DNA of 64,000 nucleotides from Magallana gigas (GCF_963853765.1 NC_088854.1:39432001-39496000), one strand, 5' to 3'; shown: positions 11,201 to 34,104, counted from the stretch's first letter. Numbers and translations: made by a program. The notes: generated by a model not told the origin, from the sequence alone.

Positions 11201-14200
11201 TTGTAAACATGCGCAGTTTACATTTACGTGATTCATTTATAATTATGCATAAGAACATTTTCATTCCTCCTGACATAAAATGATAAGATAATTCAAATAA
11301 TACAAATGATTGGTCAACCTTACGTATTCAGATCATCACACTTACAAAGTTTGGGTCAGGTATTTCCAACATAGCAAAAACAGCTCTTAAAACGGCATAT
11401 ATACCTTTAAGGTACTTCACTACACCGAGACTTATACTTAACACTACGTCACAAGATGGCGATTTAACTGTTTTATTAAGCTGTTTGTATCAATCGATTC
11501 AGATGTATATCGTCAAAGCTCAGTGGTTTAAGTATCAGGCTTGTGAAGGTCATTAGTTGGAATCCATCTGGGGCTTTTGTTTATGTTTACTGAATGAAAT
11601 TTTTGAAAATACCATTTTTTATCTAAAATTGCACATTTTTTCGCCTATTTGACATATACACTTCTTATCCATCATGCTTTCTATCATAATCAAGTAATTT
11701 TCTGCTGTTTTGAGAAACTATTTCAAGGTGTAGTGAGGCACCTTAAGCCTTATGAAGTGTTAAAAAAAATTACAATTATAAGCAGGTCATCACCTGAAAA
11801 GTAATCTTGACCAAAAATCTTTTTTTGCAAATACATGTATATTGAATTTTATTTTAAGTGAAACTGATATGCATGTTTTTTTTACATATTCAAAATGTTT
11901 TTTAATAAGTGAACAGATAAACTCAGGTGCCAAAAGTATGTCAATGTTTTTCTTTTTAGTATTTACTAGTATTCCATTGAAAACCGCAAAGCATAGTCCC
12001 AGAGTCATTTCTAGACCGATTTATTTAAATTTCTAAATAAATGAACACGAAATTCATTTCCCTTATTTGGCATAATATAAATATATAATGTTTTTCGATA
12101 CGTAATGTGTAATGTATGAAATCTCATTTTTTTGCGGTTTGACATTTCATGTAATAATTTTAATCTCTGAATCCATTTCTGAAATACATCAGGGTACGCT
12201 GAGTGAATGAATGATGCTTGTCGGGACTTGTAACGACGACCAGATGACCAGATAAGAACTCATCCAGTTTTAGAAAAAGTAAAAAGTCTTTTGGAGCTAA
12301 ACCTGGATAGTATGGTAGGTCTGGCAAGACGGTAATTAACCTTCTCTGTTTTCTAAAATTGCTACACAATCTTAGATGCATGTGATGGGTCATTATTATG
12401 AAGAAGACGAACATGCATAAATCCTGATACAGAGCGTCGTTTATGATAATACATGTATTTCTTGGTCTGTTTAGCATAACATCTCGGTAATACAGACCTG
12501 TATTAACAATATTGTCCTTCGGTATCGAAATTTGTACGGCTCTACCATCACAAGAGAAGAATATGCAATACCGTGTTTAGTAAGCAATATTTTATTTCCA
12601 ATTTTTATTACTGGTTCGAACTAGTGAACCCGTGATTCGTCACCAGTAACATTATTTGCAAATTGTTCCATATTGAATTTGGGAAAAATATTTAGCATTT
12701 GCTTAGCGGTTTGTACTCGTAACCGTTTTGGTCATCTGTCAATATATGCATGCGGTATCAATCTGGCATAATCTTTCATATTTTCTGATGAATTGCACCC
12801 ACGACAACGGTATGCTTATCACGAATGGAATGGTGTATCTGCAATCACTTTCATCTATTTCTCCGACTTTTGAGGCAGTTGCTTTGCTCGTTGCAGTCAC
12901 AGGTCGGTCATATTTTGCTGCAACTTTGACGGATCGACTTTGTGTCAGTCAGAAATACGAACTGTCTCATAAGATTATCTTATTCGACATAAACTTCCCC
13001 CAATTCAGTGAAACTCTGCATTACTGAAAGACCGAGTTTATATAAGCTGTAATTTCTTTAATATTCTTAACTCGTTTCAAAACATTTTTTTCAACAATGA
13101 TCAACGACAGGCTATATTGAAATGACTATAAGTTTAAAACTATGCATATGTAGAGATGAAGGCTCGTGTTTATACCTTTTAAAAGGTAAAGAATAGAGGT
13201 ATTCAAGAGCATCATCATCAACGAAATTGTGCAAAGCGTTAACGTGCTATAATATACATTACATATTCATATCAGACACCCCTCCTTTTTTTCTAGCCTT
13301 TAAGAGGGATCGATGGTCGTGTCCATTTTTAGACTGTATTGATCTCTTTTAAAAGGAGAGCTCAATATAAGAATAAAGGAAGAAATCCAGATTTAATAGG
13401 TGACCTATATGGACCTTTTCTTTCCTAAAAGAAAGTTTATAGCTAAAAAAAAAATATGTCTAAAACTTTAAGGAAGATTTGATGGCTAATTTGTTCACCA
13501 CCCAGCCTCCTTAATATACCAGATGAGAAGTTAACAATTACAAACTAAGATATTTTTGCTTTGAAAACTGATAAGGAAATATACAAATGCACAGTACTGT
13601 ACAGAGTTGAAAATAAATTTAACCGTTGTGTTTGAAATACTCAGTACCAAATCTTAAATTAGGTTTTTTGAAAATTATTTCAATGATATGTGCGAAAGTG
13701 CAAATAAAATTCTGCACAATTCAATCCAAATTTCTTCAAAATATGACGAAAAATATGACATCTGAACATCTGTAGTGAAATAAACTTAAATTAGAATAGT
13801 TACTTTTGGCATGCGAGTCGGTGTACGTCATCAACATGTAGATGCACCTTAAAACTGTACAATGTCATGCATATATCAGTTACCGCGGCATCTCTGTTGT
13901 ACAAAAAATGTTGATATTAAATGCATTCATGAATTAAACGATGCGTTTTGGCTTTTGCCAAATTATCTTACCCTTGTCTGGAAGACACGAACAGTTCAAC
14001 AGCTTTAGTCTAAGGGTATTCACATGCCTTAAAGAACAAGATAAGTTCCTTAAACCTATTCCGATTGTATTATCATCCAAAGCATCTCCTTGCATCCTTA
14101 TTCCGGTTATATTCTTGGGTATATAACGCTTGATTCTGTCAAAGTCGACGATACATAAACTACTGCTTAAGCAGTGGAGAAAATGGCCTGCAATGATGTC

Positions 14201-14986: not shown

Positions 14987-15218
14987 NNNNNNNNNNNNNN
15001 NNNNNNNNNNNNNNNNNNNNNNNNNNNNNNNNNNNNNNNNNNNNNNNNNNNNNNNNNNNNNNNNNNNNNNNNNNNNNNNNNNNNNNNNNNNNNNNNNNNN
15101 NNNNNNNNNNNNNNNNNNNNNNNNNNNNNNNNNNNNNNNNNNNNNNNNNNNNNNNNNNNNNNNNNNNNNNNNNNNNNNNNNNNNNNNNNNNNNNNNNNNN
15201 NNNNNNNNNNNNNNNNNN
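14987..15218. other. Assembly gap (232 N)
   Basis: Run of N. Confidence 1.
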
Positions 15219-16792
15219 TACCGTCAATTAGAATGGAGAGGGGGCAACCAAAGATACAGTCCAATTTCCAGAATATCATTCAAATTGATCAAATAAAGAA
15301 GGCATCCCCATCTTTCCATCACACATAACTTCAAGCAGACTGGAGTTAACATGAAAGAACTAAAAGGGATAAGCTTTTTGTAAAAATAAGTTTTGTTAGA
15401 TAAAATACAATAATAAAAAAAGAACTGACAAAACGATAGTTTTTCCTATGGTATGATGCAATTTTGTACTCAAAGCTCAAATTTCGACATAATATAAATC
15501 ATTTCATCATAAAAAGTAAGAAAATTACAATTACAACAATTCAACTGAGAATTTTCTTTTATTGATATTCACAAAATATCATATTTTGTTTGATAGATAT
15601 TAAATATTTATGTCATCATTTTATCTCACAAGCTCTAAATTAAAGCCATTCGATGCAAAATGGTCTCCATAAAGTAAATGAATAAAGTTTCAAGCTTAGT
15701 TTTGAACTAAATAAAAGATCATAACCAAAAGAGTAATTTTGTTGCAAGGGTTTGTTTTTACAAGGTAAAACGATTTCGATTAATAAAAGACGTTAAGCTA
15801 TGTAGTTCATGTAAATTAAATATTTTGATAAAAGAAACCTTGCAAAATATTTCAAGTGTAGTTCGTAATGTGTAAATGTTGAATTACATGAAATAATGAG
15901 TAAACCTTTGAATTAGAAATTGCCTACCAGGCCATTTAATTAAAAGATTCCATTGGGTCTATTATCATATCGTACGAAACCAGGTTAAAATTATGATAGA
16001 TCTATCAATTTTTAAAGATTTTCAACCAAACCTTGCACATTTTTCCCCGATCTGAAAAAAGTTATCAAAGTGTATTATGACAATACATATTTTTTAGATA
16101 GTATATGCTCAATCCATTTTTGTTCATTCAAAACGTTTAAGAATATAAATACAAGTACCTTTATATAAGATTTATTCAATAAATAAAATGAACAATAAAA
16201 CATAACAAACAAATTATATATAATATGTAAATAAACAAAACAGACAGAGACAGCCTGTAAAAATTCATCCATTTTAACCAGACAAAGGGTGTCAAGGCGC
16301 TCTCGCATCCCCTGTGTTCACTGAAAGTGTAAATCAAAATTATTTTGATAATTTTGAAAAAAAGTTTATTTGATTATTATCAAGATATAATTATAATCTA
16401 GAAACGTTTCATGCTACTATAGTCTGAGTCATATTTAGCATTCAGAAACTTGATGGAACGTTCACTTGTCAATCAGATTATCGTACACTATTTTTTCACA
16501 CCGGATAATTTAATTAAATGCAACAATTAAGTACTATATTTTTGTTTCATTTTGAAATTTTTAAATTCTATCTATATCGTTCAAAACTAGTATCATTTCC
16601 TTTCCTAAAAACAAAAGCGAATTCTTTTAGCAACAAATCAGTTAACTATTTATAATTGGAAACAAAATAACACTGAATGAATAAAATGCATACCTCCGAT
16701 GCAGGTCGACGTCATTGGATCAAAACAAAACTCGTTCTCAAAACATGTCATCTAAAAGGAAAAATAAAGGAAATTTTAAATAACTCAGAACT

Positions 16793-16794
<2 letters not shown>

Positions 16795-16858
<64 letters not shown>
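16795..16858. repeat. (GA)n microsatellite
   Basis: Direct read. Confidence 0.98.
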
Positions 16859-16862
<4 letters not shown>

Positions 16863-17069
16863 CAAACCTCTCCACAGTTATCTCCTCTTCCAACCATTTG
16901 TGTCTGTGTCTGAGGGGCGGTAGGCCTTTGGTTATTGAGACCAACGTTAGAACCTTTAACAAACAAATAACCTGCATCAAAATTCCACTGATTTTTTTTT
17001 TGCATCAATCATTTTCACTTTTAATAAACAAGGCTTGGAATTATATTTATAGGTAGATTTAAACTAATG

Positions 17070-20000
17070 CTACTGACCAGGAGCGAGTGGTGCTCCGTTA
17101 CAATTGCCACCCTGGCAAATCTCGGCTATGTCTGGTATAAGAAGTTCTCCTCCGTTTCCCGGTCTACCTTGCACTGGCCCCTGTGCCGGGGGCATCGCTC
17201 GGGGATTTAGACCCCCTAATGCAGTGAGAGGAGGCAGAGACATCCCCGTTCCGGAGTTAGAAACGCCACTCAAGGGGGATGATCCGCCACCTATATTTGA
17301 TGGACCTCTTGGTAAACTGAAAGGCGGAAGTGAGTTGGAATTTTCCGTTATTGGCGGGAATAAATCAGCTGCATTTGGAAAAGGATTAGGATCGATCTGT
17401 CCAGATGAACCCGGAACTCTCGGATTGTTCGGGATGTTGGTGGCACCACCAGGTCTTATTATTTCGGGTGCAGGTCTCATAAAGGGCGGAAACCTTGTTC
17501 CCGAAGAGTCCCGAACAAGCCATCTGGAATTCGGGTCGTTTGATGGTAAGGAATTGGTTTGCTCGTTCGGAGTAAGTGGAGAGAACTGCCCAGGTTGACT
17601 ACCAGGGACAAATGGTGGTATTTGACCACGTGTTAAAAACGGCAGGTTTGGTAGATTTTGGAAATTTGGTTGATTAGGTAGATGTGATGTCGGGTTGTTG
17701 TTGTTGACTGAACGAACATCTGTCGGACTTACCGCACCTTATAAAATCAAACTCAAATTACTTCTCAATACCTTTCTTAAATTAACGTCATGATTAGTTA
17801 CAATTTGACAAACTTATTACAATTACATGTGTACCATATCTTCTTTTGTAAAATAGCACTTAACATTTACATTTTTTGTGTCTTTGTCTGTGATAACACT
17901 ACGAATCCACATTGTAATGTATACTCAAACACATTTCTTCAATGACTAGTTTATCTAATCGTACAATTGCTGAAATTTGAAGATGGGGGAATAAGATGGC
18001 GCGAATGCCCATTCGGTTTAGTAGTGAAATACGATTTTAAATTTATTTTTCCCCAATTAAATCTATTCAAATACATGTATATTATAATACAACTTTGCAA
18101 AAGCAAATTTTCTAACTATAGTCAGTTTTTAATATATTTAACAAAAAATAAGGAAAAAAAATATTGTCGGAAATTTTGGTGGTATCGAACCCGTAACATA
18201 AAAAACCCTAGGTATATACGGTTAGCTTATGCCAGGTACTCTAACCACTGAGCCATTTCAGACACAACAAAGGCGACTTTTTAAATATTATGTGTGACTA
18301 AGGTCACGAATTACCGGACTTGTATTATTTTTTCAATACGTTCAGTTGTTGGGGTACAAAATGATATTTTGTTTTCCATTAGACCTTAATTAGACTATGA
18401 GAAAAATATGGAGTACAGACCCACTCTATAAAAGAAAATGCCTTTAAGTTCTAAAAAATGACAATATTTGCAGGTTTTGATACGTATACGCCTGTTTGAG
18501 TCAATATATTCCAAGTATTGAACATACCTACAGGTTACAAATCAATGATTTGTTAAATAAATATTGTTTTAAATGATTTTAAAAAAAACCCATCAGATTT
18601 GTTGATACTTTAATTTTTTTAGTAGCCTGTCCGACCGCGTATGGGCATTTTACACGCCTTATCCACCCATCTTCTTTATATAAATATAACTAATAAGAAA
18701 TCATTCTTTGAATATAATGAAGCGATCAAATACGGTCGGGTGTAATTAATCCCATCATAAATCCCTTCGGGCTGTATTATGTTCGATCACCCCCCCCCCC
18801 CCTTTGACAGTATTTGATCACCTCATAATGGCTGCTCAGAGAATGAGAATGTCTAATTCCTTATAAATTGAAATGACTTTATATTGACAATGTACAACGC
18901 ATCTTACCGACTGTAAGGGCTTCTCCCGTACAATGGCCTTCCACACATCGCGATGGCGGGGGACAAGGCCTCTACAAAAAACCCCAAAGAACATAAAATC
19001 CTACCAATACGACTTTGTGAACGCCTCAGAAACATCGAAGACAAAATTCACTAAAAAATGAATGTCTAATTAGAAATATATTAAAACGGACGCCTGGTGG
19101 ATGTTGGATTTTTAAAAAAAAATTAAAATCCCATTTTCCCCACACGGTAGAACAAATAGGATTATATTATTGATAGCATAAATATAGACTGACATGTTCA
19201 TCACAGGCTCCATCTGCAGACGAATATGCTATGATAGCAAAAATACAGATTGCATTGTTTATTTACACTTTTAAAATCTCAATTTGTTGGGACTTGATGC
19301 TTTATAAAAAAAAAAACAACAAACAAAATCGTTTAATATGTAAAATAGATTAAAACACCCTTTATTTAAAGAAAAGTAAAATTTTGAAATGGATAAAATA
19401 AGAGGCACTAGCTACCAGGTGTAAATATGTGATTCATGGAAAGTAAGTGGGGTTGGTAATTAGAAAAGGAATACGGCCGTATGGAAACTTATAAAACACC
19501 CCCCTCCACCACCGATTTTTCAACATTTCCGCGTATGCGCAGTAATCATCTTGATCTAGGTATACTATATTCTAATATTTTCTAATACTTACATCACATG
19601 TTTCATGATGTGGATTAGCTGTAAATAAAAAAAAGCACATCAAGTTAGTTTCAAAGTTATTCATTTGAACGTTGATACATGTAGGTAAAAATATTTTCCT
19701 TGCACATGTCATGCAAAAGAATCTAGGAATCAAAACAAAAAAAAAATATTTATGTTTCGTTGACCATTTAACGTTTTTAAGGATTATTCACTAGCGCCCT
19801 AAATACACATATGTCGATTTCAAAGCTCGTTATTGGCTAGAATTGTCACTGTGGGCTTATGAAAATGACGTCAACAGATTCCCAAAAGGCTGACGAATGT
19901 CTTTGTTTAAAATTGATTTGAGTTCCGTTTATAAAGATTAAAAAAATGCTTAGTCGACTTGTTAAAAACTATTTTTCGTGTGTAGATGATTTATTCAGGA

Positions 20001-22819
20001 AGGAAAATTATATCTAATTTATTTAACAGCAATTGATATTAATTGGGATATCAAGTGATCATGAATCAATATTGAAAACAGAGAGACAGACTTACAATTC
20101 AGTACGTCACAATGACCATCATGACATCTGTAGCCCGGGGGACAGGCCGGCTGGTGGGGAGAAAAATTAATATGAAAATTAATTATGCATAAGGTGCAGA
20201 AATGTAAGCTTACGTGTTTTATCACGTACTTGTAAGCCAAAAAATGATGTCTCATTCAAAGAGTATGTTAACTATACATATACATCAATATCAAAATACT
20301 TTGTTTATATCTTATACGTACATGTATGTCATGTATACAAATAAGACTGATGAATATTTCGATTTTAATTTTTTGATCTCTTCGAATATTTCAACGTTGT
20401 TTGAAAATTACTTACGGTACATTGGCCACCTCTGTCTACAAACAAATACATGAGGGGGAATAAGAAAATGCAATCGTTTTGTCTACAGTGCAACACAAAT
20501 TCCAGGAAATAACGATTTGATGGATTGCACTGTACCTACCTCTATCGCAACTTCCCCTGTTACAAACAAATCCGGCTGGGCATCTCGGCTAAAACGTAAT
20601 AAATTTGTGAAATAAATTACTTGTAAAATCGTATCAGTCATGAATGTCATGTTTAAAGACCACAGCAGTATATAATAATTATGATGTTGATTTAAATATT
20701 TTGACTGTATACATTCATTCAAAGAATTCCAATTTGATATGAGTGATGAACATCATCTTTTGAATTTTTTTTCTTCCCATTGATTGATGTCACTATTATA
20801 ATTTTCATTCTGTCTCTTACTGTCCTAGTTTGTAACATTTACCAGGTATTTCCTGATACAGTTTTTCTTAATCTTCTACTGACATTTTTAATAGATCGTA
20901 TGTTCTTGTTTTAATGGAAATTTTTCTTAAGATGGATACTTTCTTAAGATGGATACTTACTCTGCAAGGGACTAAAAAAAGAAAAGAAGAAGAAAGTTAA
21001 TAAAACTATTTGCTGAAAAAATAAGTGATTTGTAATGTGCAATGTATTAAATAAAAATTAATCTCAGTTTCTGTGTTTGTAACATTTTACTTACTGTCTT
21101 CGCATCTGCCATTGATGCATCTTTGCCCATTTCCACATGAAGGCTAATTGAAATGTAAACAATTAAAAAAATATCAAAAATCTTATTTATTTAGATCCGC
21201 GGAATATTCTTAAAGCTTATGACGTCATGACTTCATACTAACTAATGTTGTTTCCGTATTGCGTATTTAAGCAATATTTTTTTTGTGTGAAAAGGAGTTT
21301 TTAAGTGTTACATCATATCAAATAGTTTTTATGTAAGCAAACCAGTGAAGTTGAATAAAAAAATTTAACTACTCTTGTTGTCTGAATTTCTTAGCCATTT
21401 CACACTCTGGGAGGTTTTCTTTTTTAAAAATAATTATTATTGGCAAAATTTGTGATAAAATTATGTAGAAAGAATTTCAGCTTACCCTGCAGGGTTCTGA
21501 AAAGACCAAAAAAAAAAAAATCAATATCAACAAAGTAGTTATAATTTTTATAGGGTAAATAAATTGTTAGATACGCGATTATACGTATCAATCAAAATGT
21601 ATTTAAATATTCCAAAAAAAAAAAAATGGTAACCGGAAACAACCAAACACCTACCGTAATGGCAGTGGCCGTGATGGCACGTGTGGTTTTCCTCACACAT
21701 CGGCTAAACAAGAAAATCAAATCAAAACATCAAATTTCTCATGCAAAAGACTTTGTATAAAATAATAATCAAAATACAATTATTTAATATAATTGATTTG
21801 ATGTACATATATAAATATTGAGTATTATCAAATGTATTAATGAAATAGATACATTGATTGTCGTAAAATGTTATAAATCAATCAACGTCATGATAGATCA
21901 GATAGAATAAAATAAAGGGATTTGTTTATGGTTTGGTGCCAAAGTTGAAGTCTGCAATAGACTAGCTTAATTTCCTACTACGAGGATTTAATTGAAATAT
22001 AAAATGATTTGCCAGGAGCAGTGAGCGAAAATCATTTTAGTAAATGAGGAAGTTCAATTCTTTAAAAAACACTAATTACCTATACAGCAACAAATTTTAG
22101 TGAAAATATTTAGCTCATTACAAAATGTTATTTTTCAAACCCAGCTAATAATTAGCTAAACAAGAAAAAAAAACTTCGCCCTTACTGCATTTTAGCAACG
22201 AATTTAGAAAAGAATGTAGCTGAAATATTTAAGGCGTTGCGTAGTAACGACTTTCAATAAAAAAAATCATACGTAATAAAAATCATAAAATCTTAAAAAA
22301 TCATTTAAACAATAAAATGCTTTCTTTGGTGATTCATTCGGGATATGAAGGTAGCGACATTGCAGGAAAAATACATAACCCTCGTTAGCGGGTAATGTAA
22401 ATTTTTCCTGCAATGATCGCTACCTTCATCATTTTATTGTTTATATTAACATCTTTCTTAAACTAATTAATAAACTGATTATGAAAAGTTAGTAAAATTC
22501 ACTAATTTACTGTTAATGTACAAAGGTACATTAGCTATAAGAAACAGCCAAATCGTCTCCTGTGAGACTTTGAGTCTGGCATCGTCATGATTATTTCGTG
22601 CAGTCCGGGATTTTACTAAGGTCGCTGTAGGTTCAGACCAATCGATAAACAGGGCGTGTCAATTTCAGTCCTGTCACTTTCAGCCGCTGTAGATTTCGAC
22701 CAATCGATAAATAGGGCGTGTAGATTCAGTCTGGCTGTTTCTATAGAGCTATGAATTAACTATAAGTTTCCGTTAGAAATAGAGGAAATTATGCCTGGTA
22801 GATGTAAATATACATGTAT

Positions 22820-22888
<69 letters not shown>

Positions 22889-23632
22889 GTTTACTTACAC
22901 TACAAAGAGAGTCACCCACTACAAAAAGAAAGGAAAAGCAATGTTTATTGACAAACTGATGAAACTCAATCGATGGTCAATTTGTTTTTATCTGAATTAA
23001 TCGAATTGAACTTTTAATCTATGCATCGTTTCGAAGCTTATATACATGTAATTATCATATATGATTGATATAGCTATACTTCTTGTACATTAATCTTACT
23101 TTGTTGACATCCGCCTCCATAGCAAACATAGCCCGGGTCACATTCATCCTAAGAAATAAAACCCGGGAAAATGTTAAAATATCATATTATTAACCACAGA
23201 AATACTTTTTTGAGACATCCATTACAGATACTAACTGGACATGGCGAGGAAGAAGCACGTGGTCTTGTTAACGTTGCAGGAGGGGGTGGCTGGGGGTCTC
23301 TTCGTATCACCCTCACCATGAATGGATTATGAAAGATCCTCCCCCTGAAATCTAAGAACATTTAAATGAATGTAAAACTATTGAATAAAATTGTGTTCAA
23401 ACAGTTTCAGTAAGTAAGTAAGCAGGCGGATCCAACATCTAATTTTGATTATATATTGCTATTCAATTAAACACCCACCTCCGGGGGGGGGGGGGGGGTT
23501 AAAAATTTATATAAGATAATACAATATTAACGAGAACAAAATCACAAAGTGTTGAAAATTTTTGTACTTACTGTTCTGTTGAGCCGAACAAATGTAGTAT
23601 ATAGAAGAAAGGAGGCATATCTGTAACCACAT
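17070..23632 (-). CDS. Gene B: secreted protein, 362 aa, with four C-x3-C-x5-C-x4-C modules and a Pro/Gly/Asn-rich tail
   Basis: Exons 23632-23572 (signal MWLQICLLSSIYYICSA), 23351-23236, 21703-21655, 21496-21486 (11 nt), 21143-21095, 20971-20961 (11 nt), 20588-20540, 20435-20416 (20 nt), 20150-20096 and 17737-17070. All GT-AG, phases continuous, total 1089 nt. Core: SPCP-PMCEENHTCHHGHCHY-EPCR-PSCGNGQRCINGRCED-IPCR-PRCPAGFVCNRGSCDR-DRGGQCT-PACPPGYRCHDGHCDVLNC. Confidence 0.88.
18700..18860. mobile_element. Central-palindrome element, family 3 (related copy near 53366)
   Basis: Arms ATGAAGCGATCAAATAC (18717) and GTATTTGATCACCTCAT (18810). GTATTTGATCACCTCATAAT recurs at about 53420. Confidence 0.6.
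22310..22810 (+). mobile_element. Second near-complete copy of the 4790 palindromic element (intron 2 of gene B)
   Basis: Colinear similarity to 4790-5330 (GGGATATGAAGGTAGCGACATTGCAG, CAGCCAAATCGTC, GACCAATCGATAAA.AGGGCGTGT). The right hairpin arm is partly deleted. Confidence 0.85.
22823..22886. repeat. (CT)n microsatellite
   Basis: Direct read. Confidence 0.98.
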
Positions 23633-26600
23633 TTGTTGCTTTATGAAAGACGCTGCAAGAATTGAATAACTATTTTAAATTGACGAAAAATATTATAGCA
23701 CCAACATTACATGTACCTTTGATGATTTTAAAAAATGCCCTTGTGCTTCTACACGGTTTGCTCGAGATTTTCTGTCAAGCATTTGCTCTCGTACATGTCA
23801 TTCTTTATTAACATAATTTCTAACTTCTTTTTTATACCTGTATTACTTCGTTATCTTGATTGAATTTGATTCTTTTTCCATGTTGTAATTTTCTTTTATA
23901 AAAAAGCAAGCCTTGTTATTGCAGTTATGAGTAAACCTATCTGGAATAAAATCCTACCTTGATGGATAAATAAAAGTATAAATCCCGATTGTAAACTAGA
24001 ATACAGGTACTGTGTATTATTGTGCCTCCTAATAATGTCTATTTTTTTTTATTACAAACCCACTTTCCTTTGTCGAAGATTGTGCAGTATGGAAAAGACG
24101 AGGGAATTGTCAGAAGTTGGTCGTTATCTGTCATACTGCACATCAATCACACGCATGAGCACTCTGACAAATGACGACGTCACAGATACACTGTAATCAT
24201 CAGCCACCATAATGATGACCTTTGACCCCGAATAAAAAAAATAACCCACGACTGCAACGAACATGACAGAGAAAATAATCACCAAAAACACATTTTGTGT
24301 ATACACAAGGAAATCCAGATTGACTAATTAAAAGTACAAAGGTTCATAGGAAAACCGTGTGGTTTGTTTCGAACACGTTTTACTATTCGGATTGACGCTA
24401 TTTGTTTTGTTTGAACTTCATGACACAAATTCAATAAATCAGTGGTTTACCTAAGAACACACGTAAATTCTAATAAGGAAGAGGAAATTGATTTAATGCC
24501 TACTTATTTACCTATTTAGTCCTATTCAAAAAATACTTCAATATTAATTTAAAATCTGTTGGGGAATCTTTTCCAAAATTTTTAGAAGATGGTAGAGGAC
24601 AAACTGTGAAGCAATTTGCTCCCAGAATAATAGGACATTGTTTGCAGTTCACATCTCTAGGACGTTTTGGTGACTTTGATAATAGCACATGACATAATTC
24701 ATTCAGGGCACGTTTCTTTTTCAAATAAGTACACGTGTTTTTATGAGGGAAAAACCGCACGTATACCATTTGAAATTCGAATTTATTAAAGAAAATCAAT
24801 CAAGATTCACAAATTTTATAGGGAATTTATTGTTATATACATTTTGATAATGAAATAAATGAAATAAAGAAATTTGAAGGCCAGCTAAATAGTATTGGTA
24901 AAGTTAAAATAACCTTGATTTAATTTAAACAATATTTTATTATGTAAAAAAAAATATTACATAATAGGATTGGGCAGCAGGCAATTGATTGGAAAGGGAA
25001 CAAAATTCTTAGTCATTTCTTTTTCGTTTGATCCATATTTATCAAATATATTCTTGTATTTCAATTTGCATATGCATATCAATGTAAGCTCTATTTATTA
25101 TTTTTAGTTCTATTTAAAATATAAATAAATTGTCTTATACATTAATAGCTTGTTAACGTTTTAGGATTATCAGATTTTACATTATTTCCATACACCTAGT
25201 AGCTGTTCCGCATGAATTCCGCATAAGTGAATTTCTAGTGCTCACAGTTGCAAAAACGCATCTTATCCTTTTATTTCCTGATTAAAATTTAGTGGATAAA
25301 ATGTGTAAGTGCAAAATCTAATCTTATATCAATATATATAGGCGATTATTGCAAGTGTCCAATTTTCTGTCCACTTCCGGTCAAGCGCCATCAATACATA
25401 ATCATTCAGTAAATTTGTCCACCGATGATTTCATACCCGTCCCATTTTTTCAAGAGTCATTTAGTCTTAGTTACACATTTGTACAAGATAACAAGCATTG
25501 TGAAATATAAATGGTTTGTACTCTAGTCAAATCTTCATTTATTTCTTGAGGTATGGGACTTGATATTCTTAAATTATCCGATGTTTTAGAATCTATATTA
25601 TTTAGAATTGCGTCATTTAAAGGGCAATCATAGACATACATACATGATATCTGAATTATTTTTCTTTTTTAACTAGAATAAGTAACCATTAACGACATGT
25701 ATGCAACCACTTTATTGTATTGCTATCGTATTTGTAAATTATACAATATACATACATGTACATTATGGAAACATGTTGAACTAAGTATAAATAATTATTC
25801 ATATAGATAAGCTTATCTTGAATAAGGGTTAAGAATAAGAAAAAAATCTTAATTAACTATTACATCATTTTTTTTAGTTACAGTCCTAATATCAAACTTA
25901 CAGATATGACAGTAGGAATCATAAAATAAAAAGTATATAAAAGAGTGTATCATTTTCTAAGAAAACATTGAAATGTCATATAACATTAAAATAAAAAAAA
26001 GCTTTCCGTCTACAATATAAACGTGGAGAAATGATATGTGTTAGAATAATAAAAAAAAACCCTCTGTATATTACACAATAATATTGTAGATTTTCAAAGG
26101 TTACGTGAATACGTGTACATTATTTTGAAATGGATAAATACCTATTTCAATACTCTCATCAAAATACGCTTTCTGGGTATTTGAATTTTCTTCAAGCGTA
26201 AATGATCTTCACACAAAATCTTTGAATGTTACATTCTTTATTTGGATGTACAATTTTTTTTTAGAATTTATTTTACACCAGTCTACATTTAAAAAATTTA
26301 AAAAAAATCCCAAAAGATACTAAATAGTTGTTCTCAGAAATGCAAAGAATGATGTCTCATGAAAATGAAATACGGTTGAATCGAAATATCATTACAATAA
26401 AGTAAATACGGTGTGTATAAAATGATGCATGTATATGTAAATCTTATAAAATGAGTGCTCATGTACAAATGAATAAATAATATATATTTCCCAAGAGACG
26501 AAACAAAGTTTACACGTACTTGACATAAACCCATAACTCCTCTGGGAGATTAATGGACATCATCCATCTTACAAACAAATTCTTCATTCAAATCTCACTG

Positions 26601-26876
26601 CAGATGTTACCCAATCGAACGTTTAAGATTCTCATTTTATGCTTTTATGTTTGCATATATGCACTTGAAACAAATGAAAAGTCTCATAAATAGCACCGAG
26701 ATCCATATGATTAAAGTACTGCACAGTCAATATCAGGTCTGCACTTGTTTGTACTTATAAGTGGATTTCATTCATCCAGTTTGGGCTTGGTTGTTTTTCT
26801 TCTTCTTGCATCAAATCCAATGCATTGAACGGGGAATAATCAATTTATTTGACATATTGAAATATATACTTTAAGT

Positions 26877-29800
26877 TCAAGGAGAAATGTTGACCCCTTG
26901 GCCAGTGACGGGGTCCTGGAAGAGGATTGAGCTCAAATCGACACCTAACTGGCTGTCTGGTATATTAGACCGCCTGAATTCGCTGGCGATCCTAGCGTGA
27001 ATATCATTCGCTCCTCCTCCGCCATTCTGCTGAAACTGGGATCCGAACGCACCCGGGGTGGTCCTTCTGCCGCCTCCTACAAAGAAGTCGGTCACCTGAC
27101 TTCCTGGCCCTCCCCCTTGTTGATTCCTGACCTGGTGGTGGTGGTCGTGGTCTCCTCCTCCCGGTCCCTCGCGGTGATGATCATTATGACCCGTTTGTCT
27201 CGTTATGGGGATCAGAGCACCCCCGGCCCCGGGCTGTGAATGGTCATGGGTATGATCCAGACTGGGATTAGTGAGATGTGTCAGCGTATGGCGATCTAAC
27301 AAATGGAAGAAAATATATACATGTATTCATGACCTTAATTTTATATAAACTTGACGGTTGTAAAAGAGCAAATCAATTATCTTCCACTGCAGACTTGTTA
27401 TCAATTTCAATGTTATAAAAGAGTAAATAAATGATGAAGAGGCTTTACCAAGTTCGCAATGTCCGTGGTTGCATACTTCGGGCGGAACACATGGAACCTG
27501 TATACAAGAAAAAGAAAATAAACCCTTAATTATAATGAGTCGGTCATATCGTAAAAAGAGGTTCACGAATAGTGAAAGCTAAGAGGGTTAAACTTAGTCT
27601 TTAGTAGACAGATTGATTGTCTTTACTTACAGCGCACGTGTCTGGTCCGCTTGTTTCTGTAGAAGTAAGAAAAGAAAATTATCAATCAACCCAATTCGCA
27701 TAGTCCCTTTCAAGTATTTCTTGCCAGCTGTAAACATTTTGTAACAGTTGTGACAAAATTCTTAATAAATCTAATTAGCCCACTAGAAATGTATTATTAA
27801 ATCAATTATGAGTAAAGAAAAAGTTGGATTTTGATGAGAAAAATTAATGGTTAAAAAATGATCGATTAACGATACCTATGTCGCAGTGTCCATTGTGGCA
27901 CACATATCCAATGGGACATGGTTCCTGAAAAATGGTACATAGATTAATACACTACATTTTTTAAATTCGTTTAACATTTGTTGCTGTATATTCACTATAA
28001 ATTCATTCTATTTAAGTCTTTGAAAAAATCGTTAATTCAATATAGTTGCAGTTCTTTGGGGGCGGGGGTAAAGGGGTTCCAGACCCCTCCCTGCAAAATT
28101 CAAATTCCTTTAAATCTACATTATAAAATTACCAAAAATACGCCCAAGACACCTCCCCCCGGGAAACTTAAATGAGCGTCAGACCCCCCCCCCCCCCCCC
28201 CTGGAAAAATTGTCTCGATCCGTGCATGCGCTGTATAACTGTTTTTTCGGTAGTTTCAGCATTATAGAGATTAAAAAACTTACCCGACACTGTGCTTCAT
28301 GTAAGTGTGAAGAGGACTCTGAAATAAATTCAAAATGAAATAAACTATCACGTTTCAATATTCTATTAATCAATTTGATTTTGTAAATCATGTCAAAAAC
28401 ATCAGTTTTAAGCAAAAGCAGTCGTTACATAAGCATTATTAAACTGACAGTTTCACAACTATATTGTCATTATTGCGATGCAAAAAATAGTTTCTTAACC
28501 AACACAAGACTGATTTTCAATAAAAGATGTTAAAAGTGTAATCACCATAACTCGTGAATCTGTTTATTCAATAGGCATTCCGATAGAAGTATAGAACACA
28601 CTGTACATGTAATTATACTTTTGCAGTAAAATATTTACACATTTCATTTTCAACTCTTGCTGACAATAATTTCATCATCAGGAAGCGGTTGACAGGTCGA
28701 CGGACATTACTGTATTTTTAGCTTGTCATACTAGCTTACGCACATTTTCCGAAATCATAATACATTGTATCTGTTGTATTATTTTTTAGCCAAGTCACTG
28801 TATTGATCTTCGACTTCGATAAGGTTTTATTTACAACAATTGGCCGATTGTTATATGACGAAGGTTTGGTTATCTACAAATCCTCTTTGCAATGAGCCTA
28901 TTACATATTTGTGCGAAATAATAATAATCGTAATTTAGTTAGTACTACCTTTGTCACAATGGCCGTCATGACAAACAAAGCCTGGAGGGCATGGTGGCTG
29001 TAAACGAAATAAAAAACAGTTAAGTCTTTTTTTTTTATCATGAAGAGATTTTCATAGTGTATATGAATGTCAGGTATAGAAAATCAAATACTTGTACATG
29101 TACAAATGTATGTTATCAAAATACTTACATCGCATACTGGACCACTAGGAACAGAACTCTCTGAAAGAATTTTCCAAAATGTCATCACATACAAAAAGAC
29201 TCAAATTTTAAAAAAAATTGCCACTTGAAAGCAATGAAACAAATGGCAAATAATTACATTCACTTGAAAGTAGCGCAATCTTCTTAATTCTTGCAAAGTG
29301 CTTGATTAGGCCATTTTTATTTACAAATTAAGTCTGTATATATTAGAAAATTTCATCATTTTACCTGCCAGACATGTTCCCCGATGGCACACCTGTCCTG
29401 GACAACAAGCAGGCTGAAAAACAAAGATTACTTTACATGTAATTCTAGTTAATATGGGTTACATACCTATTACATTACATATAATGCTAGTTAAAATGGG
29501 ATACATACCTATTACATTAAATGTAATACTAATTAAAATAGGACATACCTATTACATTACATGTAATGCTAGTTAAAATGGGATACATACCTATTACATT
29601 AAATGTAATACTGATTAAAATGGGACATACCTATTACATTACATGTAATGCTAGTTCAAATGGGAAACATACCTATATGTACAATCATACATAGAATTTT
29701 GGTTTAATAATTAAGATATTCCAAAACTATTTTCTTAGTTTATATAATTGATTTGCTGGTTCAACATTTTATGCTTAGGAAACAACAAATTAGTTATAAT

Positions 29801-32800
29801 AGTAAAATTTAAGTATTATTACGATATAAAGATTTTTTCCCCATCAGGGGAATCTATTTTCTGTATTTGATTGGTTACTTGAATTAAAATTGCAAATGAA
29901 ATGGAACTAGATTAACTCAAAATGCACAACTTTATGCGCAGTATTTTTCTAATAATAATAATAATAATAAAACCCATTTCCAATGTCTATATTGTAGGTC
30001 TATAAATGTCTGAGGCAAGACCTTATTCAAAGTCGAGCAATATGGCGTATATATATTTGTCATGCGTTTGTTTTAGGAAGTAGATAACGTTAAAAAAATG
30101 TTACATAATATCAACGTTGTTTAACTAATTATAATAATGTTTAATTAATTAGAGACGTGTAGGACCATAATGACCATATCAAAATGTTTACATGATGTAT
30201 ATCCTTGGGCAGTTTCTACTTTGAATGACCTTGTACGTCATGTTATATGTAATAAACTGTCACAGATTATTTATTGTAACAAATTAAACGGTCAAAACTG
30301 ATGACGTAATTAAAACAGCGGGGAATTTATTTCTGTTTCCACGAATCTATTATTTTCAAATCCGCGTTACAGGTTGAAATTAAGCGTAAAATTCTACACA
30401 AAAAGTACAGAAAGTTTAAATACGATGCAAATTTATCTATCCACAGTTACCGCATCATAAATTTAGAACATCTGCGTTGAGCATTAAAAACTATTACAAA
30501 ATGATTCTAATGTAATACGTCTTTTTAAAAGGAAAAATATAAAGTTTTCATAATTATCTATTTAGCATGTCGTGTTAGCATTTATTTTAATAGAACTGAT
30601 AAAGAATGATTCTAAATGTAATTCCATTACCATTTAATTCAGTTATCGTACATATTTATATATCGCAAAACTTTTTTATACAGCGAACCTCAATTATTAA
30701 TAAGATTTTGATACATACCTCACAGCGATCTGCAAATAAAAAAAGAACATTCACATTTTAACTTTTACATGCAGTTATTAGAATTTCTGACATTATTTTC
30801 AATCAGGTATTAGTATTTTGTCATGATATTAATGTGTTTAAATCAAAATAAACGAAATGTTTTCATTTAAATTGATAAAAAAAATCTAGGAACTATTCTC
30901 CATCATTACTTACGATTATCTATACATTTTCCATCCCGACATGTCATTCCGTTGGAACATGCTGGCTATAAAATAAATAAAAACGAAATCAAAGACTTCA
31001 TTATTTATCATCGATATAATATTTGTAAAGAATCACAAACTGCAATGGTGTGAGGAAATGTTCTTTTCCGCCAATAATTTTCATGTCAATTCTAAATTGT
31101 TATATCATTGATAACATATTAAATTTTAAATTAAAATAATAATCGAAATAGATCATATTAATCTGAGACCTTTGAGTCATGATTTTGTATGCCTAAGACT
31201 GGAAAAAATAATGATGACAAAATCTGCAAAGTCATTTTATTCTATACATACATAACACCAGCTTGCACATATCTCAAATCTATTAATTATTTTTAGATGG
31301 AATTATCATATTAATCTAATATATGACAATAGCAACGACAATTGTGTGGTACCATTTAAAAAATTAGAAATTGTAAATGTTGAAGAAATCTTGCACGTTC
31401 TTACAAATGTGAAAGTAATACATTTAAACATTCCATATCAACATTATTCCAAAATTAATACGTTTGAAAAAAAATTATTCAAACGAATTCCACTTATAAA
31501 ACTTGAAAAACGCCCTTTTATCTGATATACGAAGTAAAATGACGCAAAACCGCAAAAATATTTACTTAATAAACAGATCTTAGCCACCGAAGAAAATGCT
31601 AAATAACTAAACAGGTCAAAAGTTATACGAATTACAAATTAATAAATCTTCAAAGACAAATTGTTACTATTTTGGTCCATGACTCTACAAAAAATATATC
31701 CAAAGTTTGGAACGTCCCCATTGTATGCGGTTTTCACATAGAAGAATGATCGATGGTACAGTTTTATAATCAGAAGACCGTGATACATCATACTTACATT
31801 ACAAGGAGCTGAAAATAAAAAAAAAGACCACGTGAGAAGAATTGTCGTTTTCATTTCATACATAAATTATTCAAAAATTGATACTTTATGAAAATAAATT
31901 AATTCAATTTCAAAAAGACAGAGTACAAGAAAAAATAATACGTGCATCTTTTTTTTTTCATCTTAGTTATACAAATATATATTTATATATGAAATATTTA
32001 AATAAAGAAAAATCAAGTAAGACATACCAATGTCACAATGTCCGTGATGACATATATAACCATTAGGGCATGATGGCTGTAGAAGAAAGAAGAAAAAAAC
32101 ATTAAACATTAAAAAAAAGGAGGAACCATTACGACAGAAAATATCAGATTTTGTTTTAAGAAAATAAACAGTTCTCTAGTAGCATTTGCGATCAGATTGA
32201 TTTGTAACTCAGTTTTATTTTTATTGATTGAAAGGAAAATACAATTTTGGACACTTACAGTACATAAAGAGTCCAGTCCTACTGTGAAAGAAACAAAAGA
32301 ATTGATTAAATAATTTGCAAAAAACCTGCGTAAATTAAATACTAGTAAACATGTAGCCATCTAAAGTCTGTCACAGAAGAGCAGATATATAGATCTATAT
32401 TTATAACGTGTAACCATGTTTGTCACAAAAAACCAGATATCTAGATCTACATTTATATAAACGTAACCATCTAATGTCTAACACAGAAAGACAGATATAA
32501 AGATCTGCATTTATACACATGTAATATTTCTATCACAGAAAAGCAGATATATAGATCTGCATTTATATACACGTAATTATCTAATTTATGTTACTGAAAA
32601 ACAGATATATAGATCTACATTTATATACACGTAATTATCTTATGTCTGTCAGAGAAAAAGAGATATAGAGATCTACATTTATTTACATGTGACCGTCTAC
32701 TGTCCGTCACAGAAAAGCAGATATAGAGATCTACATTTATTTACATGTGACCGTCTACTGTCCGTCACAGAAAAGCAGATAATTATATAGAACTACATTT

Positions 32801-34104
32801 ACGTACATGTGTCCATCTAATGTTTTTACAGAAAAATAAATATATAGATCTACATTTATTTACATGTAACAATCTAATGTCAGTCACAGAAATGCAAATA
32901 TATAGATCTACATTTATATACACGTAACCATCTAAACATCTGTCACAGGAAAGCAGATACTAGTATATAGATCTACATTTATGTGTAGGTGAATGAATAA
33001 TTATACACAACAAATACTTTCTGCAAAGTTGCTATTTGCAAGTTTAAACAATTTAAACACAAGGTTTGGCGTTTATCTGCTATACAAACATTAACCTGTA
33101 TACCAACTTTGTATTTACTAGCAGACCACAAAATATACCATTTTTAGATATTATGGGAAAACACAAAGCACTGGGAAGATATTAGACCACATATACATGT
33201 AACTTACAGTGGCATTCTCCTCCATACAACAGAAGACCAGGAGCACATGTGATCTAAATCATAGAAATAAAAGCATGATAGTTCAAAAACTTACTATCAC
33301 GGCATTCTCCCGCTAAAAGTCTTAACCCTCGAGCACACGATATCTAAAAAGGACAAGATAACTTAAATGCGATATTTTGTTTTGTAAATTTTAGTTGAAT
33401 TAAGATATAAAAAAAATTCTGTTAATTCTTAATCATAGTTGTGTACTCGATCTATATATATTTTTTTTGGCTGAACCATTTACCCGTACGAAATACTTAC
33501 ATTACAAACTGGCTGGATGTGTGTAATATCTGGCACAAAACCAGTCTGAGCCTGAAATGGAACATTTCCGGGACCAGGTTGCTGTGGGATTCTCCTTGGT
33601 GGTTGCCTGTTTATAGGTTGTTGTTGTGGCCAAATGTTCTGAGGTGGAAGGGTTTGCGAACGGGAATTCGGTTGAGGCCAATTTGGTCTTGGCCTCCGAA
33701 AGAGTCTTTGACACGCTGGAATCCAAGGATAATCAAAACAACGACCCCAAGACCACCTAGATCTTCCGATATTAAATGCCGGAGAAGACCCTATAAAAAA
33801 AGGCGTAAAAAGTTTGTAACCTTTGTCATGTTCGAGAATTTTACATTGAATAAAGTTAATTCAAACCAGTGAGTATAGCAATAAGTTTAAAAAAATAATA
33901 AAGCAGCAAATATTGCAATTTCTTTTTTTTTCAAATCTAATTTAGAAATTATACATTAAATTAATTATAAAGAAATGTGTAACATTTACCTCTAAAAATT
34001 CGGGGTCCTTGGTAAGGAATAGGAACAAAGCGAATAGTCCTAAATATCTGTGACTCCACGATAGAAAAAAGTAGCGCGGACAGCACAAACAACAGAATTT
34101 TCAT
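26877..34104 (-). CDS. Gene C: secreted paralogue of gene B, 386 aa, with five Cys modules, a Pro/Gln/Arg-rich N-region and a His/Gly-rich tail
   Basis: Exons 34104-33990 (signal MKILLFVLSALLFSIVES), 33790-33501, 32076-32028, 31808-31798 (11 nt), 30965-30914, 30729-30719 (11 nt), 29413-29365, 29160-29129 (32 nt), 28997-28949, 28318-28284 (35 nt), 27497-27449 and 27295-26877. All GT-AG, total 1161 nt. AATAAA about 30 nt after the stop. Confidence 0.88.
29455..29680. repeat. About 42-bp minisatellite (about 6 cores) in a gene C intron
   Basis: Unit GATACATACCTATTACATTACATGTAATGCTAGTTAAAATGG read directly. Confidence 0.9.
32375..32985. repeat. About 55-bp minisatellite (about 11 units) in gene C intron 2
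   Basis: Unit approximately GTCACAGAAAAGCAGATATATAGATCTACATTTATATACACGTAACCATCTAATGTCT. Confidence 0.9.

What the first reader, a model, noticed from the sequence alone, without database searches (positions are those of the whole stretch)
17070..34104. Phase-locked micro-exon system: two tandem secreted genes whose Cys modules can be recombined by splicing
In both genes every module exon (49, 52 or 55 nt; three conserved Cys) is phase 0 to 1. Every intervening micro-exon (11, 11, 20 nt in B; 11, 11, 32, 35 nt in C; one Cys each) is phase 1 to 0. Any module exon can therefore splice in frame to any downstream micro-exon or to the phase-1 tail exon, and any micro-exon to any downstream module exon. 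Skipping a single exon breaks the frame. This allows variable repeat number and linker/module combinations while keeping four Cys per unit. It resembles schistosome micro-exon genes, but with paired complementary phases rather than symmetric exons. Most exons are too short for ORF finders, so the genes may be mis-annotated. Whether alternative splicing actually occurs is inference.
Basis: partly seen in the sequence, partly recalled or inferred. Interest (0 to 1): 0.82.

Follow-up and report, generated by a model that had tools for sequence, protein, structure and literature searches.

The report
Oyster cysteine-repeat genes with micro-exons
Two neighbouring Pacific-oyster genes for secreted cysteine-repeat proteins really are built from alternating 46-64-base and 11-35-base exons, but RNA shows nearly all exons are always spliced in, so this is an unusual and often mis-annotated gene structure, not a splicing-based protein shuffler.

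Summary
The exon pattern is real. Both genes lie on the minus strand. Their introns alternate phase 1,0,1,0 from the first exon to the last. Cys-module exons (46-64 nt) run phase 0 to 1 and linker exons (11-35 nt, one Cys) run phase 1 to 0.

RNA contigs and raw reads confirm every checked gene B junction, including both 11-nt exons. Two public cDNA contigs carry every gene C exon at the predicted borders.

The genes match Magallana gigas XP_011446482 ("sporozoite surface protein 2-like") and LOC105341592. Older RefSeq models were correct. UniProt and the newest RefSeq models are broken at the micro-exons.

Combinatorial splicing is not supported:
- Gene B shows one isoform in three RNA assemblies and in all full-length transcript-derived proteins examined.
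- B and C align module by module, so the array predates their duplication.

Real alternatives are few:
- Gene C's first module comes as a conserved mutually exclusive exon pair.
- Crassostrea B orthologues have a possibly optional seventh module+linker pair, which has decayed in this genome.

The phase pattern is best explained as inheritance from tandem duplication of a two-exon unit.

The parts
16292..23632 (-). Gene B, coding span. It has 17 exons, a 1413-nt CDS and encodes 470 aa. It matches M. gigas XP_011446482.1/.2, 'sporozoite surface protein 2-like'.
   Evidence: Exon table. The length equals that of transcript-derived protein P0006. Junctions were confirmed.
23572..23632 (-). B exon 1, 61 nt, phase 0 to 1. 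Hydrophobic N-terminus MWLQICLLSSIYYICSAQQN, read as a signal peptide.
   Evidence: identical to the start of P0006.
23236..23351 (-). B exon 2, 116 nt, phase 1 to 0. Ends in ..SPCP, so it carries a linker-type Cys.
23100..23148 (-). B-M1 module exon, 49 nt, phase 0 to 1.
   Evidence: A loose end reads on from M2 through L1 into this exon.
22899..22918 (-). B-L1 linker exon, 20 nt, phase 1 to 0 (GDSLCS).
   Evidence: The loose end behind 21703 carries this exon.
21655..21703 (-). B-M2 module exon, 49 nt.
21486..21496 (-). B-L2 micro-exon, 11 nt (xPCR).
   Evidence: tables 5 and 5c: these letters sit between 21144 and 21655 in X3, X5, X8 and in X24 raw reads.
21095..21143 (-). B-M3 module exon, 49 nt.
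20961..20971 (-). B-L3 micro-exon, 11 nt (xPCR).
   Evidence: table 5c: TCTGCAAGGGA sits between 20588 and 21095 in X3, X5 and X8.
20540..20588 (-). B-M4 module exon, 49 nt.
20416..20435 (-). B-L4 linker exon, 20 nt.
   Evidence: joints 20150>20416 and 20435>20540. An unspliced contig at 20121-20569 has depth 19 against 151 for the spliced form.
20096..20150 (-). B-M5 module exon, 55 nt.
19593..19618 (-). B-L5 linker exon, 26 nt.
   Evidence: joints 18971>19593 and 19618>20096.
19195..19470 (-). Decayed seventh module+linker pair inside the L5-M6 intron. The module remnant has no Cys and no AG acceptor (about 19470-19415). The linker remnant reads ..SSADGACDEH|gtcagt (about 19235-19196).
   Evidence: It is homologous to the optional 29-aa insert of Crassostrea orthologues.
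18908..18971 (-). B-M6 module exon, 64 nt.
17078..17737 (-). B low-complexity Pro/Asn/Gly-rich exon, 660 nt, phase 1 to 1.
   Evidence: Transcript-derived proteins read on past ..APLAPG.
16868..16953 (-). B linker-type exon, 86 nt, phase 1 to 0 (..GDNCGE).
16694..16751 (-). B terminal module-type exon, 58 nt, phase 0 to 1 (MTCFENEFCFDPMTSTCIG).
16292..16320 (-). B last coding exon, 29 nt including the stop codon.
26877..34104 (-). Gene C, coding span. It has 17 exons plus one alternative exon and a 1308-nt CDS. It matches M. gigas LOC105341592.
33990..34104 (-). C exon 1, 115 nt. Hydrophobic N-terminus MKILLFVLSALLFSIVESQ.., read as a signal peptide.
33501..33790 (-). C exon 2, 290 nt, phase 1 to 0. 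Ends ..QPVCN.
33295..33343 (-). C-M0a, 49-nt module exon (ISCARGLRLLAGECRD). First of the mutually exclusive pair.
   Evidence: Present in L004 and in RefSeq X1, absent from L003.
33208..33253 (-). C-M0b, 46-nt module exon (ITCAPGLLLYGGECH). Second of the mutually exclusive pair, 41 nt downstream of M0a.
   Evidence: Present in L003 and in RefSeq X2, absent from L004. The same alternation appears in Saccostrea cucullata X1/X2.
32259..32281 (-). C-L0 linker exon, 23 nt.
32028..32076 (-). C-M1 module exon, 49 nt.
31798..31808 (-). C-L1 micro-exon, 11 nt.
   Evidence: 0 mismatches, contiguous.
30914..30965 (-). C-M2 module exon, 52 nt.
30719..30729 (-). C-L2 micro-exon, 11 nt.
29365..29413 (-). 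C-M3 module exon, 49 nt.
29129..29160 (-). C-L3 linker exon, 32 nt.
28949..28997 (-). C-M4 module exon, 49 nt.
28284..28318 (-). C-L4 linker exon, 35 nt.
27876..27924 (-). C-M5 module exon, 49 nt.
27631..27656 (-). C-L5 linker exon, 26 nt.
27449..27497 (-). C-M6 module exon, 49 nt.
26877..27295 (-). C last exon, 419 nt, phase 1. His/Gly-rich tail with a conserved C-terminal block (DIHARIASEFR..FQDPVTGQ).

Best explanation
These are two tandem paralogous oyster genes, most likely from the Magallana gigas reference genome. Each encodes a secreted protein made of three parts:
- a signal peptide and a Pro-rich head;
- an array of seven short four-Cys units (C-x3-C-x5-C-x2-G-x-C), each predicted at low confidence to be a disulfide-stapled beta-hairpin;
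- a low-complexity tail, Pro/Asn/Gly-rich in B and His/Gly-rich in C.

Each unit is encoded by a pair of exons. A module exon of 46-64 nt runs phase 0 to 1. A linker exon of 11-35 nt runs phase 1 to 0. Its second-last codon is the Cys that begins the next unit. The strict 1,0,1,0 phase alternation is inherited from tandem duplication of one ancestral two-exon unit of about 60 nt. That array was complete before B and C duplicated and before Ostrea, Saccostrea and Crassostrea diverged.

Splicing is essentially constitutive, and the 11-nt exons are always included. Losing one exon shifts the frame, so only three kinds of in-frame alternative are possible: swapping one module exon for a duplicate, dropping a module+linker pair, or a NAGNAG-type acceptor shift.
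- The swap is used. Gene C's first module exists as two tandem copies 41 nt apart and they are mutually exclusive.
- Dropping a pair may be used. A seventh pair is apparently optional in Crassostrea B orthologues and has decayed in this genome.

Shown: exon borders, phases, inclusion of the micro-exons, the mutually exclusive pair, colinearity and synteny.

Inferred: origin by duplication, the hairpin fold, and function. The most likely function is an extracellular structural or metal-binding matrix protein, suggested by the CH-x-GHC motifs and the His-rich tail.
For: - Motif and splice-site scan. Full phase table.
- RNA joints and 11-nt inserts in three runs plus raw reads.
- cDNA contigs L003 and L004 match every gene C exon.
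- The transcript-derived 470-aa protein P0006 has the same length as the exon table's CDS, and its sequence follows those exons.
- The mutually exclusive pair appears in M. gigas RefSeq X1/X2 and Logan transcripts, in a second Crassostrea species, and in Saccostrea cucullata X1/X2.
- B and C align module by module and linker by linker.
- The C. virginica locus L002 keeps the C-then-B order and the 11-nt exons with AG/GT.
- Only one locus exists in the 564-Mb genome.
- C. virginica isoforms X4/X5 lack exactly one module+linker (29 aa).
- The same position is +/-29 aa in another Crassostrea species.
- A decayed copy lies in the window's intron.
- AlphaFold2 gives a hairpin for each module.
Against: - Contigs drop rare isoforms, and only four runs were laid. 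Six joints were not displayed, so minor skipping isoforms cannot be excluded.
- One UniProt model (A0A8W8L5K9) joins C-M1 directly to C-L2, skipping L1+M2 in frame. If it rests on real reads, it is a second pair-skip.
- The structure model is weak (pLDDT 58.8), and no family, structure or paper gives a function.
- Module-to-module identities alone are too low to prove 1:1 paralogy. The case rests on the colinear alignment that includes the linkers.
Confidence: 0.8

Rival explanations
1. The complementary phases are a selected device. Module and linker exons are recombined by regulated splicing to give many proteins with varying repeat number and linker/module combinations.
For: - The arithmetic allows it.
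- C. virginica RefSeq lists isoforms that drop one module+linker pair, plus a 3-nt acceptor variant.
- One UniProt model skips L1+M2 of gene C in frame.
- Gene C swaps its first module.
Against: - Gene B gives one contig per junction in three RNA assemblies, and no skipping joint was listed.
- All full-length transcript-derived B and C proteins examined contain every unit.
- Modules are conserved position by position between paralogues and genera.
- The only optional pair has been allowed to decay in M. gigas.
- In the other Crassostrea species, presence and absence of that pair splits by study, so it may be allelic.
Confidence: 0.07
2. The variation in unit number is genomic, not splicing. 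The seventh pair of gene B is a presence/absence polymorphism or a species difference. The 'isoforms' come from reads of individuals that lack it.
For: - Contigs with the pair come from SRR144927xx and contigs without it from SRR317298xx.
- M. gigas carries a decayed copy.
- The Ostrea edulis C orthologue has one unit fewer.
- Oysters are known for high structural polymorphism (general knowledge).
Against: The C. virginica reference carries the pair with intact splice sites, yet RefSeq still models skipping at that locus. This rival concerns only the pair-skip. It does not touch the mutually exclusive pair, whose two exons both lie in this window.
Confidence: 0.4
3. The small exons are chance AG..GT matches and the models are artefacts.
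For: Many open AG-N(3n+2)-GT candidates exist in each intron: 6-23 per interval in gene C, of which 2-7 carry a Cys.
Against: RNA contains exactly the proposed micro-exons. Their sizes and Cys position are conserved in C. virginica and Saccostrea.
Confidence: 0.01

Closest known systems
Mutually exclusive exons that arose by tandem exon duplication. The class includes Drosophila Dscam1 clusters and alpha-tropomyosin exons 2/3, where closeness of the splice signals prevents double inclusion (general knowledge).
   Same: C-M0a and C-M0b are adjacent homologous exons (9 of 15 residues identical) with the same phase and nearly the same length. Only 41 nt separates them. Each transcript holds exactly one of them. 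The alternation is conserved in Saccostrea.
   Different: It is a single pair in an otherwise constitutive repeat array. Double inclusion would also shift the frame. No competing RNA pairing or other selector was looked for.
[quoted passage not shown] 2010, as summarised in PMC4350168).
   Same: The products are secreted. Very short internal exons are flanked by longer terminal exons. Annotation pipelines tend to miss them.
   Different: In MEGs most of the CDS lies in very small symmetric exons that are skipped singly to vary the protein. MEGs also appear restricted to platyhelminths. Here only 6-11% of the CDS lies in exons of 36 nt or less, none of those exons is symmetric, they alternate with 46-64-nt exons, and they are constitutively included.
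Repeat proteins whose units are copied together with their introns, such as the 54-nt exons of fibrillar collagens and the phase 1-1 EGF/LDLa module exons of exon-shuffling theory (general knowledge).
   Same: Intron positions and phases are identical in every unit because they were copied with it. The unit length is a multiple of three.
   Different: The unit is split into two exons of complementary phase (0-1 and 1-0), one of them as short as 11 nt. The unit is therefore phase 0-0 as a pair, not a single symmetric exon.
Small disulfide-rich hairpin repeats: EGF-like (tenascin and PEAR1, the names RefSeq gave to orthologues), Dickkopf_N, DUF7107, EB, TILa/FOLN.
   Same: They share Cys spacing of the C-x5-C-x2-G-x-C type and a predicted beta-hairpin. 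An intron-free 612-aa metagenomic protein (P0068) carries the same C-x-P-x-C-x5-C-x2-G-x-C units as well as DUF7107.
   Different: No Pfam model matches the oyster proteins, even at E = 10. Atlas scores are 0.78 or lower, which is chance level. PDB sequence search gives nothing meaningful.

Membership tests
Schistosome-type micro-exon gene (MEG) | Most of the coding region is made of very small exons. | tested here: not met
   Internal exons of 36 nt or less make up 88 of 1413 nt in B and 138 of 1308 nt in C. Definition taken from PMC4350168.
Schistosome-type micro-exon gene (MEG) | Micro-exons are symmetric (length a multiple of 3), so any one can be skipped in frame. | tested here: not met
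   All linker exons are 3n+2 and all module exons are 3n+1.
Schistosome-type micro-exon gene (MEG) | Protein variants are generated by differential skipping of micro-exons. | tested here: not met
   All micro-exons are included in every transcript examined. Rare isoforms are not excluded.
Schistosome-type micro-exon gene (MEG) | The product is secreted and has a signal peptide. | tested here: inconclusive
   Both start with hydrophobic N-termini, MWLQICLLSSIYYICSA|QQ and MKILLFVLSALLFSIVES|Q. These were read by eye. No signal-peptide predictor was available.
Mutually exclusive exon pair from tandem exon duplication | The two exons are adjacent and homologous, with the same phase and similar length. 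| tested here: met
   M0a is 49 nt and M0b is 46 nt, and both are phase 0 to 1. They share 9 of 15 residues and 26 of 45 nt.
Mutually exclusive exon pair from tandem exon duplication | Mature transcripts contain exactly one of the two exons. | tested here: met
   L004 and RefSeq X1 carry M0a. L003 and RefSeq X2 carry M0b. No transcript has both or neither.
Mutually exclusive exon pair from tandem exon duplication | A mechanism forbids double inclusion. | not testable with these tools
   The sequence shows a 41-nt gap between the exons and a frameshift (49+46 nt) if both are kept. Whether steric hindrance or NMD enforces exclusion needs a minigene experiment.
Mutually exclusive exon pair from tandem exon duplication | The alternation is conserved in related species. 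| tested here: met
   Saccostrea cucullata X1/X2 and a second Crassostrea species show the same two alternatives.
EGF-like repeat proteins (tenascin-X-like and PEAR1-like, as named in RefSeq) | A match to an EGF-type profile (six-Cys domain). | tested here: not met
   hmmscan against Pfam at E up to 10 gave no EGF or any other family for P0002, P0006, P0012, P0043 or P0067. The unit has four Cys, not six.
DUF7107 / Dickkopf_N-like Cys repeats | A match to PF23416 or PF04706. | tested here: not met
   Only the distant metagenomic relative P0068 matches. The oyster proteins do not.

The most novel reading that the evidence does not exclude
The paired-phase layout may be exploited, not just inherited. 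Oysters would then use in-frame 'pair cassettes' and exon swaps in a tissue- or stage-specific way to tune the number and type of four-Cys units in a secreted matrix or metal-binding protein. The known examples would be the seventh unit of B in Crassostrea, the L1+M2 skip seen in one gene C model, and the M0a/M0b swap. Single-exon slips would be removed by frameshift and NMD. This would be a micro-exon variation system that evolved independently of flatworm MEGs and works through complementary rather than symmetric phases.
Probability: 0.12. Interest if true: 0.55.

Novelty: new member of a known kind. Interest (0 to 1): 0.3.

Why it matters
Practical value: this is a clean, RNA-verified case in which constitutive 11-nt exons defeat current annotation. 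UniProt and the newest RefSeq models of both M. gigas genes are truncated, frameshifted or patched with cryptic donors. The newest C. virginica annotation splits the gene B orthologue in two (the C orthologue runs off the fetched locus). The locus is therefore a useful test case for micro-exon-aware gene finding in molluscs.

Biological value: it documents an Ostreidae-wide pair of secreted four-Cys-repeat proteins that belong to no described family. They carry a conserved mutually exclusive first module and a unit that is optional or decaying. This shows how a two-exon repeat unit limits which splice variants can exist.

It does not reveal a new mechanism of protein diversification.

Tried and rejected
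- Pfam scans of both tail exons and of five full-length orthologues gave nothing.
- PDB sequence search of the Cys region gave only chance-level hits.
- ESM Atlas feature search gave scores of 0.78 or lower, which is chance level.
- AlphaFold2 on a 14-row alignment gave pLDDT 58.8. Only the per-module hairpin pattern was used. No fold search was run, because a model this weak gives meaningless matches.
A version of 35 places or fewer would give thousands of chance hits, so it was not run.
- Literature searches for accessions, LOC ids, run ids and 'micro-exon + oyster' found nothing relevant.
- Earlier findings of the scan held nothing on this locus.
- ARAGORN found no tRNA in the expressed repeat at about 18190-18260.
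- Read laying was kept to 5111 letters and stopped short of the (CT)32 repeat at 22823-22886. B exon 1, exon 2 and M1 were therefore verified only through a loose end and through transcript-derived proteins.
Tail exons went to search tools by reference, shorter exons were translated one by one in scripts, and full-length comparisons used only public proteins and contigs returned by the tools.
Full report
**What is in the sequence**

The window is AT-rich eukaryotic DNA. A six-frame scan for C-x(4-8)-C-x2-[GNDS]-x-C finds twelve matches, all on the minus strand between 18930 and 32070. Only three loose matches occur in the other 47 kb. Each of the twelve lies 6 nt after an AG that follows a pyrimidine-rich run, and each is followed by a GT donor. 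The resulting exons are 49, 49, 49, 49, 55 and 64 nt in gene B, and 49, 52, 49, 49, 49 and 49 nt in gene C. All have length 3n+1 and begin in phase 0.

Between successive modules there is one candidate with strong splice sites and length 3n+2. Its second-last codon is Cys. In B these are 20, 11, 11, 20 and 26 nt. In C they are 11, 11, 32, 35 and 26 nt, plus a 23-nt exon upstream. Many weaker AG..GT candidates exist in each intron, so sequence alone would not settle the 11-nt exons.

**RNA evidence for gene B**

The 660-nt tail exon of B is held completely by 20 public runs from 10 studies. The contig sets are small enough to be transcriptomes.

I laid three of these runs plus one raw polyA RNA run on 17700-22810. 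That is 5111 letters, kept under the operators' limit and short of a (CT)32 repeat. The results were:
- GT..AG joints at exactly 17737|18908, 18971|19593, 19618|20096, 20150|20416 and 20435|20540.
- Two joints, 20588|21095 and 21143|21655, whose 'letters between' are the two 11-nt exons (20961-20971 and 21486-21496).
- A loose end that reads from M2 through the 20-nt L1 exon into M1.

Each junction is carried by one contig per run, and no exon-skipping joint was listed. Six further joints were not displayed. The first-mate strand of the raw reads fits a minus-strand RNA.

One unspliced contig (20121-20569) has depth 19 against 151 for the spliced form. It indicates some retention of the two short introns around the 20-nt exon.

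**Identity of gene B and the state of its annotation**

Searching the tail exon by reference found a Saccostrea cucullata protein with the same layout. Using that protein as the query found a cluster of transcript-derived 463-472-aa proteins together with these RefSeq entries:
- XP_011446482.1/.2, 'sporozoite surface protein 2-like [Crassostrea gigas]';
- XP_052675800.1 from C. angulata.

P0006 (470 aa) follows my exon table through every module and linker.

It also shows that B does not end at 17070. The tail exon has a donor at 17078. Three further exons follow, of 86 nt (phase 1 to 0), 58 nt (a module-type exon, phase 0 to 1) and 29 nt. The true stop is at 16292-16294.

The same alignment exposes the annotation errors:
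- A0A8W8L6P0 reads CHYGRCLPSC, so a cryptic donor stands in for the 11-nt exon.
- A0A8W8L790 reads module 3 in the wrong frame.
- XP_065932584-7 (104 aa) end EPCRVS*, which is read-through of the 11-nt exon's donor.
- XP_011446482.3 is a 191-aa C-terminal fragment.

The fragments match the window's alleles exactly. The window therefore most likely comes from the current M. gigas reference assembly.

**Gene C**

A full-library search with its tail exon, followed by a word search with a full-length relative, identified LOC105341592. Its RefSeq isoforms are X1 (433 aa) and X2 (432 aa). Orthologues exist in C. angulata, a second Crassostrea species, Saccostrea cucullata, S. echinata and Ostrea edulis.

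Two public cDNA contigs, L003 (SRR14803156) and L004 (SRR5431084), contain every gene C exon back to back at my borders with 0-2 mismatches. This includes both 11-nt exons.

The newest RefSeq protein (XP_065927806.1, 250 aa) and K1R4M2 (183 aa) are truncated. A0A8W8L5K9 skips L1+M2 and uses a shifted acceptor.

Upstream of the six modules, gene C has two adjacent two-Cys module exons:
- M0a at 33343-33295 (49 nt);
- M0b at 33253-33208 (46 nt).

Both are phase 0 to 1, and they lie 41 nt apart. L004 and X1 use M0a, whereas L003 and X2 use M0b. The same alternation occurs in another Crassostrea species and in Saccostrea cucullata X1/X2. The two exons share 9 of 15 residues, so the duplication is old.

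Keeping both exons would shift the frame. A 41-nt gap is also probably too short to be spliced as an intron. That last point is inference.

**An optional or decaying seventh unit in B**

C. virginica orthologues ('tenascin-X-like' X1-X5) have seven modules. X4 and X5 lack exactly one module+linker, which is 29 aa. The C. virginica locus L002 carries that pair with intact sites: a 52-nt module and a 32/35-nt linker with tandem acceptors. The tandem acceptors explain the one-residue difference between X1 and X3.

Another Crassostrea species shows the same +/-29 aa. There, contigs with and without the pair come from different studies. Allelic or population differences are therefore as likely as splicing.

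In the window, the L5-M6 intron holds the decayed copy. The module remnant has no Cys and no acceptor. The linker remnant (..SSADGACDEH|gtcagt) still looks spliceable. RNA joins L5 directly to M6.

**Origin of the pattern**

In both genes all 16 introns alternate phase 1,0,1,0. The Cys regions of B and C align colinearly, module by module and linker by linker. Examples are GDSLCS with GLDSLCT, and xPCx with xPCx. C. virginica's seventh B unit aligns opposite C-M5.

The C-then-B tandem order and the 11-nt exons are kept in C. virginica. Only this locus exists in the 564-Mb genome.

The simplest account is that one two-exon unit of about 60 nt was duplicated in tandem, introns included. The finished array was then duplicated as a whole gene before the ostreid genera split. 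On this account the complementary phases are inherited, and position-specific conservation argues that each unit is constitutive.

**What the protein is**

No Pfam family matches. No solved relative turns up by sequence. No credible Atlas neighbour appears either.

The real domain seems to be C-x3-C-x5-C-x2-G-x-C, with its first Cys supplied by the preceding linker exon. AlphaFold2 predicts one beta-hairpin per module but with low confidence (pLDDT 58.8).

A distant intron-free metagenomic protein (P0068) has the same units.

The CH-x-GHC motifs and the His-rich tail of C suggest metal binding or a matrix role. That is inference only. No paper in the library mentions these loci.

**Comparison with known systems, and verdict**

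MEGs are defined by a CDS made mostly of very small symmetric exons that are skipped singly (PMC4350168). These genes fail both structural criteria and show no micro-exon skipping. The M0a/M0b pair meets the tested criteria of a mutually exclusive pair born by tandem exon duplication.

The combinatorial interpretation is not supported.

I never joined the window's exons for any search. Tail exons were searched by reference, shorter exons were only translated one by one in scripts, and full-length work used public sequences only.

Noticed in passing
window 17900-18700 and 22146-22810: Intronic stretches of gene B have very high depth on both strands in the RNA runs (up to about 1500), many variants and many loose ends. 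They look like expressed dispersed repeats or transposon fragments, unrelated to gene B's mRNA. ARAGORN finds no tRNA there.
   Followed up: partly
window 29427-29676 and 32349-32959: Two minisatellite-like tandem arrays lie inside gene C introns. One has a 42/82-nt period with about 6 copies. The other has a 58-nt period with about 10.7 copies.
   Followed up: no
window 16795-16858 and 22823-22886: Two perfect 32-copy dinucleotide arrays of the same motif, (CT)32 and (AG)32 on the + strand. Both lie in gene B introns.
   Followed up: no
L002:4877-7700 and 8001-13030 (C. virginica GCA_053477285.1): The newest C. virginica annotation splits the gene B orthologue into a 147-aa and a 348-aa model, breaking it at the 20-nt linker exon. 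Older RefSeq versions had 460-489-aa models.
   Followed up: partly
P0066 (Ostrea edulis XP_056012700.1): The Ostrea orthologue of gene C seems to have one unit fewer. C-M4 and C-M5 are merged into one module and the linker between them is missing. This could be real unit loss by recombination or an annotation error.
   Followed up: no
P0068 (ENA metagenomic protein, 612 aa): This is an apparently intron-free protein made of the same C-x-P-x-C-x5-C-x2-G-x-C units plus DUF7107 domains. It matched with E = 1.7e-10 when gene C's orthologue was used as the query. Its source organism is unknown.
   Followed up: partly
window 14987-15218: A run of 232 N (assembly gap or mask) lies about 1 kb downstream of gene B's polyadenylation region. 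It was left untouched.
   Followed up: no
window 20121-20569: An unspliced RNA contig spans both short introns around the 20-nt exon B-L4, at about one eighth of the spliced depth. Most other introns have zero depth. This suggests slow or inefficient splicing around this micro-exon.
   Followed up: no
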